Origin: Saccostrea echinata
Lineage: Eukaryota
Direction: 5' to 3'
DNA: 64,000 nt
Assembly: GCF_033153115.1 (NCBI RefSeq)
Contig: NW_026889778.1
Coordinates: 44,454,001-44,518,000 of the forward strand
Shown: in pieces, positions 15,718 through 23,010 of the stretch
Position numbering within the stretch: position 1 is the first letter of the stretch
Layout of the letters: the number at the start of each line of letters is the position of its first letter
The notes under the pieces: generated by a model
What the model saw: only the letters and a program-made list of their open reading frames with translations
Database searches by the model: none
Told to the model about the DNA's origin: nothing
Position numbers and translations under genes: made by a program

Positions 15718-15867
15718 TCAAACTGTCTTCTTTTGGTTTGAATTCCCTTCCTCCTGCTTTAAAAGAGTTCCTAAAACAATTCCAAGGAACATTACACAAC
15801 CAAGTTGGGTGTTGGAGCGGAATTTTTTAGCGCAGTCGTCAGGATTTTCCAAGTCTACTGTGTACAA
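15718..15867 (-). CDS. COQ2: COQ2 last coding exon ([49 protein letters not shown])
   Basis: Acceptor tttttcag|TTG; 150 nt to TGA 15718-15720. Confidence 0.93.
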   Translation of the reverse strand: MYTVDLENPDDCAKKFRSNTQLGCVMFLGIVLGTLLKQEEGNSNQKKTV

Positions 15868-18800
15868 CTGAAAAACAGAATATCATGATTACATAATGAT
15901 CATTTCAACACAAAGGATCATACTTGGTAGTCCACTATATAGTAATTGTGCTCATCTTTTATGTGTACTTGTACATGTTGTATATCCTATCTCTTAAATT
16001 AAACAGTTTTGATAACTACAAACATGTACTTGGTATGATCCCTGCCAAAATAGAAATTATCATAAGATAATAATTATATGTCAAGTACCTTTTTTATGTA
16101 CAATAAATGAAACATATATCACTTAGCCTTAATTACATGTTTGTACAGAACAAACCTTGACCTAAAATCTTGCTTCCTTTTGATATGCTGAAAGCACACA
16201 TACAATAAAAGAAAAAAAGACCTATAGGACCTACCTGGTGAGCAATATGAGCAGCTGTCAGTGACACAGCTGTGTAATAAGGCCAGGTCTGATCACACAT
16301 CTTCCCTGTAAGAACCAGTAATGACACCATGCCTGTCCCAAATCCGGCCAACCACGTCTTGGTTTGATCCCCAAACTTCAGAGCTGTAGACTTCACGCCT
16401 ATCAGCATGTCATCATATTTATCCTGATTCAAGACAAATCAATTTCTTGCAAGCCAAAGTTTTTAATAATAATTCAGTAATACAACTTAACAAAATTCTG
16501 TAAGTTGTTAACTTAGTTCAGTAGATTTTTTTTTTTTAATTCAAGATTTGAGTCTGAAAGAAATTACAAGTAATTTTACATATTAACTGATTTGTTAGAA
16601 TGTATTTTTTATATAATCTTGTTGCAAGTATATGTCAAACAAAAATTAATCAGTGCTAAATGCTGAACAAGGCAAATTATATTTTTAAGCAGGTTATGTA
16701 CATTAAAGCAATTGGACATACATGTATATGTTATGTATGTATTATGTGTAATTCTAAAATGACAAGGTATGGTCATTTTAATTAGGGAATTATTTAAAGA
16801 AACCAATGTTACTTAAATTAAATAAGAATGGTAAACATGCATGCATTCTAATAGAGTTTCTAAATCATTGAATAATTGACCCATGGATCACAGTGCTCAC
16901 CTGTGTCAGTTTGTCAGTGAAATATTCATCTTATGCACACTTTATTAGAAATAAAAGTGACCTTGTTTGAGTCTGACTTGGAAGATGGTATACAGAGTTG
17001 AAGCAATTTACAGTCTTCGGACTATGCTCTTCCTCTCTTTTGTGATTGGTAGAACTTGCATGGTAAAAATTTTCAATTATTTCATTTGTTGAAATGTTAT
17101 TCCAGGCAAGGGAGTAAATTTTCTGATGATCTAATTTTCATATGACTTAACAATTTTTCAAGATTTTCAATCTTAAAAAAAATTAACAAAACAAACAGAG
17201 GGAAAATAGCAATAAATAAATCTAAATAACACTTTATTCTTTTATAACAATTACTAAAATGTGTTAACTTTCTATATTTTCATTGTAAACAGAAATGTTC
17301 TTTATTGCATGCAGGCTTTAGGGCTTCTACTTATTCTTTTTTCCCCTGTTTTGCACTGTCTTCATCCAGATGCTCTGTTTTCTCCATAAACTCTGACCAG
17401 CACAGTCAGAATTTACGGAGACAGGCGAGCGTCTAGTTGAACAAGACAAACTGTCTTTCACGTGGTAGGGCTAAATGACGGTAAAAAGCTGATGAAGGAA
17501 ATGCTCAAGAATAATACGGCCTGATAAGTGTAGGTTTTTAACTGTTTAAGGTTGTTGCTAAAATCCCTTTGAAAACTTTTATGCCTTTGTTCATAGAACT
17601 TTTATGACAACATTCCTAACTAGATGTCTGACTTTTCTGGAGATTCCAATTGCCTTAAAATAGGTTATAATGAGACTAAGCTCTGCTGACCATTCAGAGC
17701 TACATCTTTTTATTCAGTGAAATCAATGTAATATTTTAATGTTTTGGTGCCTTTAGTTATATAAATCTCTCAGAAAATCAGAACATATGTTAAAACATAT
17801 AATTGTTCTACATGTAATAAACTGTGTTTAAAACCACTTCTCAAAATGTAAAAATCTGAATAAAAAAATTAATTTTTTAAGACATGGAGCTTACTGACAA
17901 ATGACAAATTTCGAAAAATTTTAACTGAAATAAACAATCAAAATATAATATTTCATTCGTAAAAGAAATTTAAAAGAAAAATAATTTTTTGAAAAAAAAA
18001 AAACAAGCCTGATAGTAATTCAACACACACACAATGAATAGCATGCACTCACTTGATGGGCATATATGGTGTCATAAACCATGGTCCAGCAAAAGCCACT
18101 TAAATACAGAGGTAGGACAGAGAGAGGATCTAGCGAACCTGTGACAGCCGACCAGCCTAGCAGGGCTCCGTAGTTAAATGTAAGCCCTAGAGAAACAAAT
18201 GTAGAGGTTAAAGCATCAGCTTGAACTTGGCAGTTAAATGCTCAAATTCTGAGGAGTGGATGGCCACCACTAAGGCTAGAGGTTTTAAAAGAAATGCAGT
18301 TAATTGTTTAGTAACAATTTAATTTGGAGGAACAAGAAATTAAAGTTTAATGTGGTGCTTATAAAACATCACAGTCTTGTTAAAGAAGCTACTTTGTGCC
18401 TAGAAAGAAAAAGAGGAAAGCTCAGCAATTTTAGTACTTACTGCTAAGTTTATAGCCTAGCTGATATTTTAACACAGAAAACTCTAAAAGTCTGCAGTTT
18501 TAGCAGAGAGGCTTCTGATTAGGAGGAAAATTTTAATAAATGGAAATGATCTTTTCAAAACATGTTATGTATGTAAAAAATATAGTTCAATATTTCCCTG
18601 CAGTTTTTTCTGCATGTTAGAGAAATGATTGCCATGCTCAAGATATACATGGCTGCCACAGGTTGTACATGTACATGTATAGGATGTGGTTATTAAAGTT
18701 TAAATATTTTCTATCAGCTTAAGCCTTTAAAGTATAAAAAATCAATTGGTATAGATTTTCACATGGTAACATTCATACTAATCTGACATTTACTAAAAAG

Positions 18801-21800
18801 ATGCCCTTACTATACACTAAGAATTTCACTTGCACACACTTCTAAACAAATTGCATAATTATGTGGTTTTACTCTAAAATTTGAAAGCACACAGTTTTAA
18901 ATTAATGTAGTTTGATTTTTTTTTCATGCTTAAAACCATATCTAGCAATATTGTAATTAGTATTATCAATACTTTTTACAAATTGTCATTTATCATCAAT
19001 TCTAAGTGATGGGGATACTTTACAAGATTAATATTAATTAAATAATTTCCAACATTACTTGTTTGCCTTGTATTATGACATCTAAAATAGCTTAAAATGA
19101 AATTTTAAAAGAATGTATCAAAGAAAAATAGTACCTGTAGGAAAAATCAGGAAGCAAAAAGTTTATGTATATTGCAAAGTCCACTCTCTAAATAAATGTA
19201 TGCCACACATGGATATTTGCCTACACTCATTATGAACTTTAAGTATTATTGCCTATATCAAACAAAAAGGGCAAATGCATGTTATGTCAACATGGTCGTT
19301 GTGTTTTAAGCTTTCCTTTCTTTCAATGTCCTTTCCCCTTTTTTCCTATTTACTTAATACACAACAATTTGAAGCTGAATCAGACATTTTTTTCACCAAA
19401 ATGAGTTGACTGTTGTGATTTAACCCAAATAATATATCCATTAGAAATATGCATGGACATGGTGAATAAATATAATTGACAAACATGCAAAGGGAAAATA
19501 ATTTCTACCTGAAATTTTATGTAAAAATAGTAAAGAACATGCATACTAAAAAGGGTGCCCTAAAAAGAAGGAAACAATCATGCCTATTAAGAATAATAAT
19601 TATGGAAGTGAACTCCATGCATGCTGCATTTAAGGGTGCAACATACATGTAACTGATGTGCAATATGTACTACACATATGGAAATGTAAACAAATATATT
19701 TGCACTTATGCAATGAAAATTGTTTTTAGAAAAATCTTCTACCTCATTCTGTCACTAAAGGCATTAAAAGTTTGGCAAAAGCATTAATTCTGTGTTAAAA
19801 GGGAAGCAACTGATACCTGATGGGAATAAATGGTATCATAGGTGATAGTGTAAAGAATGCAGGCCAAGTAAAGGGGGATAACTGGTAACTGTAAGCAGCC
19901 GTGTATACCCGACCAGGCAATCAGGACACCCCAGTTCAGGGTCACTCCTGTCAAATTAGAAACACTCTATCAACATCTACGTAACCTGAGAGTTTTCTAC
20001 TTTTTTTTGTTTACACTTACATGTATTCTCACATTTCAAATTGATCAATTTAAACTACATGCTTTACAGTTTACATGAAATTAAAAAAAAAAATAGTTAT
20101 TAAAAGAAAGATTCTTGAATATATAAATTCATGTGCTTAGTATTTTCAGAACTTTTACATGTGAATTTGTTTTTACCTTTAAACTCAATGTATGGTAAAA
20201 CTTGCATTATATGAACACAGATAGAGAGAACTTATGAATATAATGAAGTTCTTTGGGTCCCTGACAACACTCTAAGCAATTCCTTTTAAAATTTCATGGT
20301 TATAGTGAATTCTGATTTAACAAATTTACAGATATAGTGATTTTCTATTCCACAGAAATTACAAATAATGAAATTTACATCTTTCATGATAACAACTTCT
20401 CAAATTTCCAATTTAAAAAATATCTGACATTATTTTTGCAAGTATTTATAATAGAAATTTCATGAAACAAAAACTTAGGGGCCTGGACACAGTTGCATTG
20501 TTTACAATTTTAAATGTCTATATTTATTAAAAAAATAACTTCACTTCAATGATTTGAACTTTCATGAATACTCTAAGAATTTAATGACAACAACATTCTG
20601 CACAACATCACATCAAACACCTGTGTTTTAAACGGGCACGAGGTCTTTTATTGCTAGCGTTTACGTTTTTCCAGGTGTGTTCAAACTGATTAGTCTACAC
20701 ACATCACTGAACATGGACTCACAATACTGATTTTGTTTTCTGGCATTTCTTCTCTGAACTTTCTGGATTATAGTTTTCATATTTTTCATTAAAACACAAC
20801 AAAATTTCTACTGTCTTTTAAGTATTATGGATAAATTTTACTTTGTGAAAGTTCAAGGATATGTGTCAATCATGCCCGTCCCAAAAATTGTAGTTTTAAT
20901 AATTTCCAGACAGATAACAGAATTTTCTTAATAGGCTTTTAATATATTTTGGTGTGAAATGCTCTAGCAAAAGATAAGTCATGATATCATTTAGAAAATT
21001 TTAGAAAATATTAGATTCAAATATGTGTCCACGCCCCTTTAATACTTTACTGAGCACATTCAGTAGTCAAAAGAAAGAAAACATGTATATTGCTGATGCA
21101 ATCACTATATATATTTTTATTAATTCGTTATGCAGATACAACAAATAATGGATATAGCGAAGTAAATATACAGGTCCCCAGGACTTCCCTATAACTGAGT
21201 TTTACTGTATATCTAATAAAAGGAATTTGCTGTGTGTATTTTCCTCTTCTTTTGAGTCCCATATGATAGATGCATCTTTGCATCTATTCTGTGGGAACTG
21301 ACAGTTTTGGCCCAGTCACTATGGTTATTCATATCTTAACTTCATGAAAATTTCACATCACCAGAATTTTTTTGTGACAGTATTTTGATTAAACTATGTA
21401 AACAACCTAAAAATATATTATTGCAATTTACCATTAAAAAAAAAACATTTGAAGATGATCATTTGAAAAATATTCAAGGGAGAGAGAACATATGATTTGA
21501 TTGTGATTATGTACATGTAAATGTATCAATGGAAACTCCACGGTTATGAAATGAAAATAGCAAAAGTATGATTTGTAGTGTGAAACACTTCAAAAGCTTC
21601 CGAGGTAAAAACACTTGCCTAGTAATGCTTGTGGCCAGAATGTGTATCTCTTTGCGAGGGGATATGTGATCACCAGTCCCATTGATGCTGCTCCAAGGAC
21701 AACACTAAAAATTCATTATCAGATTAAGAACTTTCATTCAGAAAGGTAACATACTGACATGCTACTGAACAAACCATCTTTCCAAGGATGCACAACTTGA

Positions 21801-23010
21801 TTATACATTAATTATAAAATAATTCCAGATACAGATATATCCAGTTTTACTGGAATTACATAATGATTATTTTGATGGCAGAGCTATAATAATTTAAAAA
21901 AAATAACTTTTGGAAAATCTTTGACCTCTGCACACACTTTTATGTAACAACAACCCCCTTTATATACTCTACCTGTACCAGTTAAGCTGTAGAAGAATAC
22001 CCAGTGATATTGACAACATCCCAGCTAGACACACCAAACCCTGAAACTGAGACAACTCTCCACTGGCCAAGGGACGTAACTTTGTTCTCTCCACCTTCCG
22101 GTCAAAGTCTTTGTCCCACATGTCATTGATGATACACCCCGCCCCTCTCATGAAAAATGACCCCGCCCCAAACAATCCTAGTAGCCACAGGCTTGGCAGG
22201 CTGCCTGGGGCAGTGGCCAGGGCGATACTCCAAGTACAGGGCCAAAATAATAACCAGGTACCTGCAAATACAAATTGTAACTGTACAAATAATTTCAGAG
22301 AACTTATGAACAGAAGATGAATTACTTAAGTGTATGTTTAAGTTACTACTTTTAAATAATCACCACATAACTTTGAGGAAAAATCACTCTTTCTTTAAAA
22401 ATGAAAAAATACTCCACCCTACTATTATGACATACAAGATATATTGTAGGTACATGTAAACAGATAAATCATCTACAGCAAATTGAGATGGTGTTTATAA
22501 GAATCACAATAATTAGCACACTGTCATGTAAAAGTTCTTACCAATCGGTTTGTCAAATCGGATCAGTCTCATGTAGGGTTGTAAAACTGCTGGAGAAGCC
22601 TCTAAAATTCCTTGTGGGGAAAGCTTGAATCTTCTTTTCTGGATAATTCTACCATCATTTAAGCAATGAGAGTTCAATAATGATGACAATTTGTTAGTGT
22701 TATCTGTATTAAAATTCATCAGGTGAAAACTTGAGAACTGCCTCCAATGAACATTGTCTGTGGGTAAAACCTTATTCACTGAACTTGTTCTTTTTTCACT
22801 AAGTGTCCTGCACTGATCCACTGCATGGAATAACAAGATAGGTGTATAGCAGCTTAAATGCAATTGTCTATTGTTTATTTTATTTTCTTGGAATCTGACA
22901 TTTACACTGTGATTCCAATGGAAATTTGCAACTGCTCTTGCAAAATGCCCAAGGCATAATGATCTTGCTTGTAAACAAGATAGAGCTGGTATCTTTATTA
23001 TTTTCAGCAT
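15718..23010 (-). CDS. COQ2: COQ2, mitochondrial 4-hydroxybenzoate polyprenyltransferase (UbiA family), spliced. Coding exons 22542-23010, 21973-22261, 21619-21704, [19817-19947 OR 18053-18186], 16235-16423, 15718-15867; 437 or 438 aa
   Basis: Motifs [59 protein letters not shown] and YDTIY(A/S)[18 protein letters not shown]. All exon phases join in frame. The N-terminus is long and basic, like a mitochondrial targeting sequence. Confidence 0.97.
16235..16423 (-). CDS. COQ2: COQ2 penultimate exon ([18 protein letters not shown]...HIAHQ)
   Basis: Acceptor gaatcag|GAT; donor CAG|gtaggt; 189 nt. Confidence 0.95.
18053..18186 (-). CDS. COQ2: COQ2 alternative exon, 'a'/ubiquinone type ([45 protein letters not shown])
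   Basis: Acceptor tttctctag|GG CTT; donor CAT CAA|gtgagt; 134 nt, open, phase 1 to 0; Phe in TFNYG and Ala in IYAHQ. Confidence 0.95.
19817..19947 (-). CDS. COQ2: COQ2 alternative exon, 'e'/rhodoquinone type ([44 protein letters not shown])
   Basis: Acceptor tttgacag|GA GTG; donor CAT CAG|gtatca; 131 nt, open, phase 1 to 0; Leu in TLNWG and Ser in IYSHQ. Confidence 0.93.
20193..21207. mobile_element. Tc1/mariner-type MITE in a COQ2 intron, with a nested Kolobok-like MITE (~20477-21038)
   Basis: ta|tggtaaaact...agttttactg|ta degenerate TIRs with gtccc subterminal motif; inner ggggcctggacac / gtgtccacgcccc. Confidence 0.6.
21619..21704 (-). CDS. COQ2: COQ2 coding exon 3 ([30 protein letters not shown]), ending in a GC donor
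   Basis: Acceptor tttttag|T GTT; 86 nt; donor CTA G|gcaagt. Confidence 0.93.
21973..22261 (-). CDS. COQ2: COQ2 coding exon 2 (first aspartate-rich motif NDMWDKDFD)
   Basis: Acceptor tttgcag|GT ACC TGG; donor TAC AG|gtagag; 289 nt, phase 1 to phase 2. Confidence 0.96.
22542..23010 (-). CDS. COQ2: COQ2 first coding exon (targeting region through ...RFDKPI)
   Basis: ATG at 23010; donor ATT G|gtaag at 22541; upstream acceptor ttttttccag ending at 23088. Confidence 0.92.

What the first reader, a model, noticed from the sequence alone, without database searches (positions are those of the whole stretch)
18053..19947. COQ2 has two mutually exclusive paralogous exons: a ubiquinone/rhodoquinone splicing switch for anaerobic respiration
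Seen: two open, homologous exons, both absent from the ORF track, encode the same COQ2 segment. 19817-19947 (131 nt) reads ..[13 protein letters not shown] and 18053-18186 (134 nt) reads ..[13 protein letters not shown]. Each has its own AG/GT sites and both run phase 1 to 0, so including both, or skipping both, shifts the frame. Known: in C. elegans, mutually exclusive coq-2 exons a and e differ at Phe/Leu and Ala/Ser next to the active site. The Leu/Ser form is required for rhodoquinone synthesis from kynurenine-pathway arylamines, and the arrangement was also reported in helminths, annelids and molluscs (Tan et al. 2020, eLife). Both diagnostic pairs are here: CTG 19937-19939 and TCC 19823-19825 versus TTT 18176-18178 and GCC 18059-18061. 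Inference: this animal makes rhodoquinone for fumarate reduction during hypoxia (shell closure, emersion) by exon choice. The mechanism class is described, but automated annotation could easily miss it at this locus.
Basis: partly seen in the sequence, partly recalled or inferred. Interest (0 to 1): 0.9.

Follow-up and report, generated by a model that had tools for sequence, protein, structure and literature searches.

The report
Oyster COQ2 ubiquinone/rhodoquinone exon switch
This oyster's COQ2 gene carries two alternative copies of one exon, which would let it make either the normal quinone or the low-oxygen one (rhodoquinone); the reading is correct, but the same arrangement was published for oysters in 2020, so it is ordinary.

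Summary
On the minus strand lies a six-exon COQ2 gene (4-hydroxybenzoate polyprenyltransferase, UbiA family). Two tandem exons, 19947-19817 (131 nt) and 18186-18053 (134 nt), encode the same enzyme segment. They are 50% identical (E 5e-15), have AG/GT sites, and run phase 1 to 0.

The upstream exon has the Leu/Ser "e" signature and the downstream exon the Phe/Ala "a" signature. Including both puts a stop at codon 10 of the second exon. Skipping both gives a stop at once.

The exon pieces tile Saccostrea cucullata RefSeq isoforms X1 (438 aa) and X2 (437 aa) exactly, so the animal is an oyster. Tan et al. 2020 (eLife) list the same layout (e 131 nt upstream of a 134 nt) for Crassostrea gigas, Biomphalaria and Capitella. 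RefSeq annotates such isoform pairs in nine mollusc species and two nemerteans checked here.

A decayed partial duplicate about 35 kb away serves as a neutral control. It lost its splice sites and reading frame, while the functional e exon took one conservative change.

Verdict: real, interpretation supported, already known, low interest.

The parts
22542..23010 (-). COQ2 coding exon 1 (ATG at 23010; fast-evolving N-terminal part, ends in phase 1)
   Evidence: Sequence read. Tiles residues 1-155 of Saccostrea COQ2 X1/X2 at 102/156 identity. No Pfam hit, as expected for a presequence.
21973..22261 (-). COQ2 exon 2, carrying the first Asp-rich motif (N-D-M-W-D-K-D-F-D)
   Evidence: Pfam UbiA positions 1-90, E 1.4e-25. 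TIGR01474 E 2.3e-37. 95/95 identical to Saccostrea COQ2. Single copy in the genome.
21619..21704 (-). COQ2 exon 3, the constitutive exon upstream of the alternative pair; ends in phase 1
   Evidence: Pfam UbiA positions 93-119. 26/28 identical to Saccostrea and 28/28 to Ostrea.
21613..21618 (-). Non-canonical GC donor (gcaagt) of the intron that leads to both alternative exons
   Evidence: Read. Only this junction gives ...A-L-L-G followed by V-T-L-N-W-G, as in Saccostrea X2.
19817..19947 (-). Alternative exon 4e (131 nt, 43 full codons, phase 1 to 0), rhodoquinone-type; Leu codon 19939-19937, Ser codon 19825-19823
   Evidence: 40/43 identical to Saccostrea X2 and 39/43 to Ostrea X2. Sits on the e side of the a|e split. 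Same 131-nt length as C. gigas, Biomphalaria and Capitella e exons.
18187..19816 (-). Intron between the two alternative exons (1630 nt)
   Evidence: 1525 nt in C. gigas, computed from the published coordinates. No convincing long-range pairing found.
18053..18186 (-). Alternative exon 4a (134 nt, 44 full codons, phase 1 to 0), ubiquinone-type; Phe codon 18178-18176, Ala codon 18061-18059
   Evidence: 42/44 identical to Saccostrea X1 and Ostrea X1. In a 99/99-supported oyster a-exon clade.
16235..16423 (-). COQ2 exon 5, starting with the second Asp-rich motif (D-K-Y-D-D); the acceptor used by both alternative exons
   Evidence: Pfam UbiA positions 165-226. TIGR01474 positions 185-247. 62/63 identical to Saccostrea.
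15718..15867 (-). COQ2 last coding exon with TGA stop at 15720-15718
   Evidence: Read. 41/49 identical to Saccostrea.

Best explanation
This is the oyster ortholog of COQ2, the mitochondrial 4-hydroxybenzoate polyprenyltransferase that starts quinone synthesis. It has the known pair of mutually exclusive exons.

Exon 3 (GC donor at 21618) is spliced either to exon 4e (19947-19817) or to exon 4a (18186-18053), and each is then spliced to exon 5 (16423). The result is a 437-aa e isoform or a 438-aa a isoform. They differ only in the 43/44 residues just before the second Asp-rich motif.

By analogy with C. elegans, the Phe/Ala a isoform prenylates 4-hydroxybenzoate for ubiquinone. The Leu/Ser e isoform accepts the kynurenine-derived arylamine 3-hydroxyanthranilate for rhodoquinone, which supports fumarate reduction in low oxygen.

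The reading frame enforces exclusivity: both exons together, or neither, gives an immediate premature stop.

Shown here: gene model, exon homology, e/a class membership, frame logic, conservation. Inferred: actual splicing in this species, substrate preference, regulation by oxygen.
For: - Exon anatomy and splice sites are read directly.
- Profile matches are colinear, and both alternative exons fall on the same positions.
- The two exons are homologous, E 5e-15.
- The pieces tile Saccostrea cucullata RefSeq X1 (438 aa) and X2 (437 aa). Exactly one residue falls at each split codon, and the predicted lengths match.
- Aplysia X1/X2 differ in exactly this segment.
- Tan et al. 2020 report the mechanism, the two signature residues, and the same 131/134-nt, e-upstream layout in C. 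gigas, Biomphalaria and Capitella.
- Among 140 exon peptides from a search of 1.84 billion proteins, Leu goes with Ser (33) and Phe with Ala (82), with no Phe/Ser.
- A tree of 48 named exon peptides has a single a|e split: 93/83, or 90/79 without the signature columns.
- Polarising changes against a decayed duplicate with oyster outgroups gives, for the e exon, 1 conservative change on the functional copy versus 5 non-synonymous changes, a frameshift and lost AG and GT on the dead copy. For the a exon it is 0 versus 7, including a stop.
- Kynureninase and tryptophan dioxygenase genes are present in the genome.
- RQ is reported in oysters.
Against:
- No protein of this species was found in the databases.
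- Dependence of RQ on the e isoform has been shown genetically only in C. elegans.
- The Ser is not strictly invariant in e-type exons. Bradybaena and Tubulanus have Leu/Ala, and 6 of 140 peptides do.
- The presence of the kynurenine pathway does not discriminate, since most animals have it.
Confidence: 0.88

Rival explanations
1. Both isoforms are made, but in molluscs the e isoform does something other than commit the pathway to rhodoquinone. It might tune ubiquinone synthesis or take another ring precursor, with RQ coming from a different route.
For: The functional proof is from C. elegans only. A 2026 preprint notes RQ in animals that have neither rquA nor coq2 splice variants, so other routes exist. 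Some e-type exons carry Ala instead of the 'invariant' Ser.
Against: According to Tan et al., e-type exons are found only in lineages that make RQ. Oysters are reported to contain RQ. The e class is conserved as a distinct clade well beyond the two signature residues.
Confidence: 0.07
2. The 131-nt exon is an unused relic (pseudo-exon) in this species, and only the a isoform is made.
For: No transcript evidence could be obtained for this species. Its splice sites look weaker than those of the a exon by eye: an interrupted pyrimidine tract and donor gtatca, against gtgagt.
Against: It has an open frame and intact AG and GT. It is 40/43 identical to the annotated Saccostrea X2 exon, while exon 1 is only 102/156. 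Only one conservative change arose since the local duplication, whereas the truly dead copy lost both splice sites and its frame.
Confidence: 0.03
3. The pair is not strictly exclusive. Transcripts with both or neither exon are made on purpose, as unproductive, degraded forms that set COQ2 dosage.
For: Both combinations give immediate stops, the usual substrate for nonsense-mediated decay. The shared upstream donor is a weak GC type.
Against: Nothing shows such transcripts. Relatives are annotated with the two productive forms. This would be an addition to the main explanation, not a replacement for it.
Confidence: 0.02

Closest known systems
Crassostrea (Magallana) gigas COQ2, gene CGI_10026525, a/e exons (Tan et al. 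2020, eLife 9:e56376, Supplementary file 3)
   Same: Same family of animals and same gene. The e exon is 131 nt and lies upstream of the 134-nt a exon on the same strand. The intron between them is similar in size (1525 vs 1630 nt). Leu/Ser versus Phe/Ala. The window's a exon is 98% identical to the M. gigas a exon.
   Different: A different oyster species: constitutive exons are about 69% identical overall to M. gigas proteins. M. gigas and C. virginica each have two COQ2 entries with X1/X2 pairs. This genome has one intact gene plus a decayed 3' partial copy.
Saccostrea cucullata RefSeq XP_062596609.1 (isoform X1, 438 aa) and XP_062596610.1 (isoform X2, 437 aa)
   Same: Closest named proteins. 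The window's exon pieces tile them end to end with the same predicted lengths: e 40/43, a 42/44, exon 2 95/95.
   Different: Exon 1 is only 102/156 identical, so this is not the same species. Those records are annotated proteins, while this locus is read from raw DNA.
Caenorhabditis elegans coq-2 exons 6a/6e
   Same: Mutually exclusive homologous exons with e upstream of a. The Phe-to-Leu and Ala-to-Ser signature is the same, as is the position just before the second Asp-rich motif.
   Different: The worm exons are both 134 nt, while the molluscan e exon is one codon shorter. The worm case has genetic proof (exon deletions, RQ measurements, cyanide survival). The oyster case has none here.

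Membership tests
COQ2 / UbiA-family 4-hydroxybenzoate polyprenyltransferase | UbiA prenyltransferase domain, colinear across the exons | tested here: met
   Pfam PF01040: exon 2 at 1-90 (E 1.4e-25), exon 3 at 93-119, 4e at 124-164, 4a at 123-164, exon 5 at 165-226.
COQ2 / UbiA-family 4-hydroxybenzoate polyprenyltransferase | Two Asp-rich motifs (NDxxDxxxD and DxxDD) | tested here: met
   N-D-M-W-D-K-D-F-D in exon 2. D-K-Y-D-D at the start of exon 5, directly after either alternative exon.
COQ2 / UbiA-family 4-hydroxybenzoate polyprenyltransferase | Belongs to the 4-hydroxybenzoate subfamily rather than heme O synthase, UBIAD1 or similar | tested here: met
TIGR01474 is the best NCBIfam model for every piece tested. 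Each piece alone scores below the whole-protein cut-off, as it must. The pieces tile RefSeq COQ2 of Saccostrea and Ostrea.
coq-2 a/e mutually exclusive exon switch (Tan et al. 2020) | Two tandem homologous exons encoding the same segment, e upstream of a | tested here: met
   The order and the 131/134-nt lengths match C. gigas, Biomphalaria and Capitella.
coq-2 a/e mutually exclusive exon switch (Tan et al. 2020) | Signature residues: Leu and Ser in e, Phe and Ala in a | tested here: met
   CTG 19939-19937 and TCC 19825-19823; TTT 18178-18176 and GCC 18061-18059. Signature as stated in the paper.
coq-2 a/e mutually exclusive exon switch (Tan et al. 2020) | The e exon is orthologous to e exons of other RQ-making animals, not a recent local copy of a | tested here: met
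   Single a|e split in a 48-row tree, 90/79 with the signature columns removed. The nearest rows to the window's e exon are oyster e exons.
coq-2 a/e mutually exclusive exon switch (Tan et al. 2020) | The frame makes inclusion of both or neither exon unproductive | tested here: met
   131 and 134 are both 2 mod 3. There is a stop at codon 10 of 4a when it is read after 4e, and g+ga then taa when both are skipped.
coq-2 a/e mutually exclusive exon switch (Tan et al. 2020) | mRNAs use one exon or the other | not testable with these tools
Indirect support only: RefSeq X1/X2 pairs in four oyster species and the C. gigas RNA-seq analysed by Tan et al..
coq-2 a/e mutually exclusive exon switch (Tan et al. 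2020) | The e isoform is needed for rhodoquinone, and the organism makes rhodoquinone | not tested
   Genetic proof exists only for C. elegans. RQ in oysters is cited in the literature. Precursor-pathway genes are present.

The most novel reading that the evidence does not exclude
The a/e exon duplication may be one ancient event shared by molluscs, nemerteans, annelids and nematodes, rather than several independent inventions. Tan et al. left that question open. Here all e-type exons fall on one side of a single branch even without the signature residues, and two nemerteans (a phylum not on the published RQ list) have annotated e-type isoforms. This oyster locus would be one well-preserved witness. 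Its decayed partial duplicate offers a built-in neutral clock for the constraint on each exon.
Probability: 0.3. Interest if true: 0.45.

Novelty: already known. Interest (0 to 1): 0.15.

Why it matters
The switch lets a sessile intertidal animal keep complex I working with fumarate as electron acceptor when the shell is closed. That makes the locus a useful marker for hypoxia physiology in oyster biology and aquaculture. As a discovery it adds nothing new. The same exon pair, with the same lengths and order, was published for oysters in 2020, and current RefSeq annotates both isoforms in many molluscs. Its value here is correct annotation of this genome, where both exons should be kept as alternative forms and the nearby partial copy marked as a pseudogene.

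Tried and rejected
- **A protein of this species in the databases.** Two searches, seeded with the Aplysia and Saccostrea e isoforms, found none. The nearest Logan-derived e-form fragment (P0306) is another oyster.
- **Long-range RNA pairing that could enforce exon choice.** Ten inverted repeats of 16-29 nt and 72-94% complementarity turned up in AT-rich intron sequence. Among them, one pair flanks the e exon (19678-19694 / 20006-20022) and one would loop out the a exon (17742-17764 / 19747-19769). None stood out by eye; no shuffle or chance control was run.
- **A third alternative exon in the gene.** None found.
- **Earlier scan notes on COQ2 in this genome.** None by words.
- **Joined spliced protein.** All searches used single exons by reference or proteins returned by the tools.
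Full report
**What is at the coordinates.** On the minus strand, 19947-19817 (131 nt) is preceded by an AG (…gacag) and followed by GT (gtatca). The two peptides align over their whole length with 22/44 identities and one gap, E 5e-15. That is far beyond chance.

**The gene.** Reading outwards gives a six-exon coding model on the minus strand:

| Exon | Coordinates | Note |
|---|---|---|
| 1 | 23010-22542 | ATG at 23010 |
| 2 | 22261-21973 | first Asp-rich motif |
| 3 | 21704-21619 | GC donor |
| 4e or 4a | 19947-19817 or 18186-18053 | alternative pair |
| 5 | 16423-16235 | second Asp-rich motif |
| 6 | 15867-15718 | TGA stop |

- Each piece was searched on its own by reference. I did not build or search the joined protein.
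- Pfam UbiA matches are colinear: exon 2 at 1-90, exon 3 at 93-119, exon 5 at 165-226. Both alternative exons fall on 123/124-164.
- The best NCBIfam model for every piece tested is TIGR01474, 4-hydroxybenzoate polyprenyltransferase, and both alternative exons map to 142-184 of 282.
- Exon 2 has the N-D-x-x-D-x-x-x-D motif. Exon 5 opens with D-K-Y-D-D, so the alternative segment sits directly before the second catalytic motif.
- The donor of exon 3 is GC (gcaagt), not GT. Only this junction gives the …A-L-L-G/V-T-L-N-W-G sequence seen in relatives.

**Frame logic.** Exon 3 ends in phase 1, and both alternative exons run phase 1 to 0. If both are included, the 134-nt exon is read from its first base and hits a stop at codon 10. 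If both are skipped, the last g of exon 3 joins "ga taa" of exon 5 and stops at once. Only one-or-the-other gives a full protein, of 437 aa (e) or 438 aa (a).

**What is known.** Tan et al. 2020 (PMC7434440) describe mutually exclusive coq-2 exons a and e. The two signature changes are Phe to Leu and Ala to Ser, near the substrate sites. C. elegans needs the e form for rhodoquinone, and the arrangement is also present in annelids and molluscs. Their Supplementary file 3 lists, for Crassostrea gigas, an e exon of 131 nt upstream of an a exon of 134 nt on the same strand. The numbers are the same for Biomphalaria and Capitella, and e is upstream of a in every species listed. The window shows exactly this layout.

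**Which animal.**
- A search of the 1.84-billion-protein library with the e peptide gave 423 hits. The best were 43-residue e-type exon ORFs at 60-86% identity.
- Word-based searches seeded with annotated e isoforms and cluster look-ups gave named proteins.
- The window's pieces tile Saccostrea cucullata isoforms X1 (438 aa) and X2 (437 aa) end to end, with one residue at each split codon. Identities are exon 2 95/95, exon 3 26/28, e 40/43, a 42/44, exon 5 62/63 and exon 1 102/156.
- Ostrea edulis, Crassostrea virginica and Magallana gigas follow.
- So this is an oyster, but none of the named species. No protein of its own was found in the databases.

**How common the annotation is.** RefSeq holds X1/X2 pairs that differ by one residue in length and only in this segment. 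They exist for Saccostrea, Ostrea, C. virginica, M. gigas, Mytilus californianus, Mizuhopecten, Patella, Aplysia and Bradybaena, and for the nemerteans Tubulanus and Lineus. Pecten, Argopecten, Ruditapes, Pomacea, Gigantopelta and others carry an isoform X2 with the e-type exon. Modern pipelines therefore do catch it.

**Class membership.** Among 140 exon peptides taken from the hits, Leu/Ser occurs 33 times, Phe/Ala 82 times, Leu/Ala 6 times and Phe/Ser never. In a tree of 48 named exon peptides, all a-type rows and all e-type rows are separated by one branch. Support is 93/83, and 90/79 after removing the two signature columns. The window's e exon sits next to the oyster e exons. Its a exon sits in a 99/99 oyster a clade. 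The alignment is only 42-44 columns and the site is under functional selection, so convergence cannot be excluded. The result shows which class each exon belongs to. It only suggests an old common origin.

**An internal neutral control.** The genome holds a second, partial copy about 34.7 kb away on the same strand, outside the window at G000:C29:44433896-44439777. It covers exons 4e to 6 and lacks exon 2, whose search found only the one copy; the DNA match stops inside intron 3, so exons 1 and 3 are not covered either. It is 80-85% identical at the DNA level.
- In it the e exon has AA for AG at the acceptor and GC for GT at the donor, and a 1-nt insertion.
- The a exon has TGG changed to TGA.
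- Exon 5 has a 1-nt deletion, and exon 6 a 17-nt deletion.

I polarised the differences with four oyster species as outgroups. For the e exon, the functional copy took one change (Val to Ile). The dead copy took five non-synonymous changes plus the frameshift. For the a exon the counts are zero and seven. The numbers are small but point one way: both exons of the intact gene have been kept by selection. The copy shares this species' own Thr in Y-T-I-T-Y-D, so the duplication is recent and lineage-specific.

**Context for the pathway.** A kynureninase gene (five colinear exon matches on contig 1) and tryptophan dioxygenase matches at several loci are present. This is expected in most animals and so is weak support. 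Rhodoquinone is cited as present in oysters, mussels and snails.

**What could not be done.** Splicing, exclusivity and oxygen response in this species therefore remain inferred. A look for intron pairing that might steer exon choice found only short AT-rich inverted repeats; no chance control was run on them.

**Verdict.** It is the ortholog of a case already published for oysters and already annotated in close relatives. It is a good annotation, not a discovery.

Noticed in passing
outside the window: G000:C29:44433896-44439777 (loci L010, L012; also L002, L004, L007, L008): Decayed partial tandem duplicate of COQ2 exons 4e, 4a, 5 and 6, about 34.7 kb from the intact gene on the same strand and 80-85% identical at the DNA level. 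It lacks exon 2 and the DNA match stops inside intron 3. It has lost the AG and GT of the e exon and carries frameshifts, a TGG-to-TGA stop and a 17-nt deletion. It should be annotated as a pseudogene.
   Followed up: yes
window 21613-21618 (-): The intron leading from exon 3 to both alternative exons starts with GC (gcaagt) instead of GT. Protein tiling against Saccostrea confirms the junction. Whether the GC donor is conserved in other oysters could not be checked.
   Followed up: partly
proteins P0197/P0299 (Tubulanus polymorphus) and P0201/P0301 (Lineus longissimus): Two nemerteans have RefSeq COQ2 isoform pairs with an e-type exon of 43 residues. Nemertea is not among the phyla listed as making rhodoquinone in Tan et al. 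2020.
   Followed up: partly
proteins P0037 (Bradybaena similaris), P0197 (Tubulanus), P0014 and others: Some clearly e-type exons carry Leu with Ala rather than Ser (6 of 140 peptides). The Ser described as invariant is therefore not universal.
   Followed up: partly
proteins P0284/P0285 and P0289/P0294 (Magallana gigas); P0227/P0278 and P0280/P0281 (Crassostrea virginica): Both Crassostrea-group oysters have two sets of COQ2 X1/X2 isoform pairs, pointing to two loci or haplotype copies. This genome has one intact gene and one broken partial copy.
   Followed up: no
window 17742-17764 with 19747-19769; 19678-19694 with 20006-20022: Short imperfect inverted repeats that would loop out the a exon or the e exon respectively (23 nt at 78% and 17 nt at 88% complementarity). 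The sequence is AT-rich and no chance control was run.
   Followed up: partly
G000:C43:810851-1022202: Tryptophan 2,3-dioxygenase profile matches at several separate places on one contig, some with stops. This suggests a cluster of copies.
   Followed up: no
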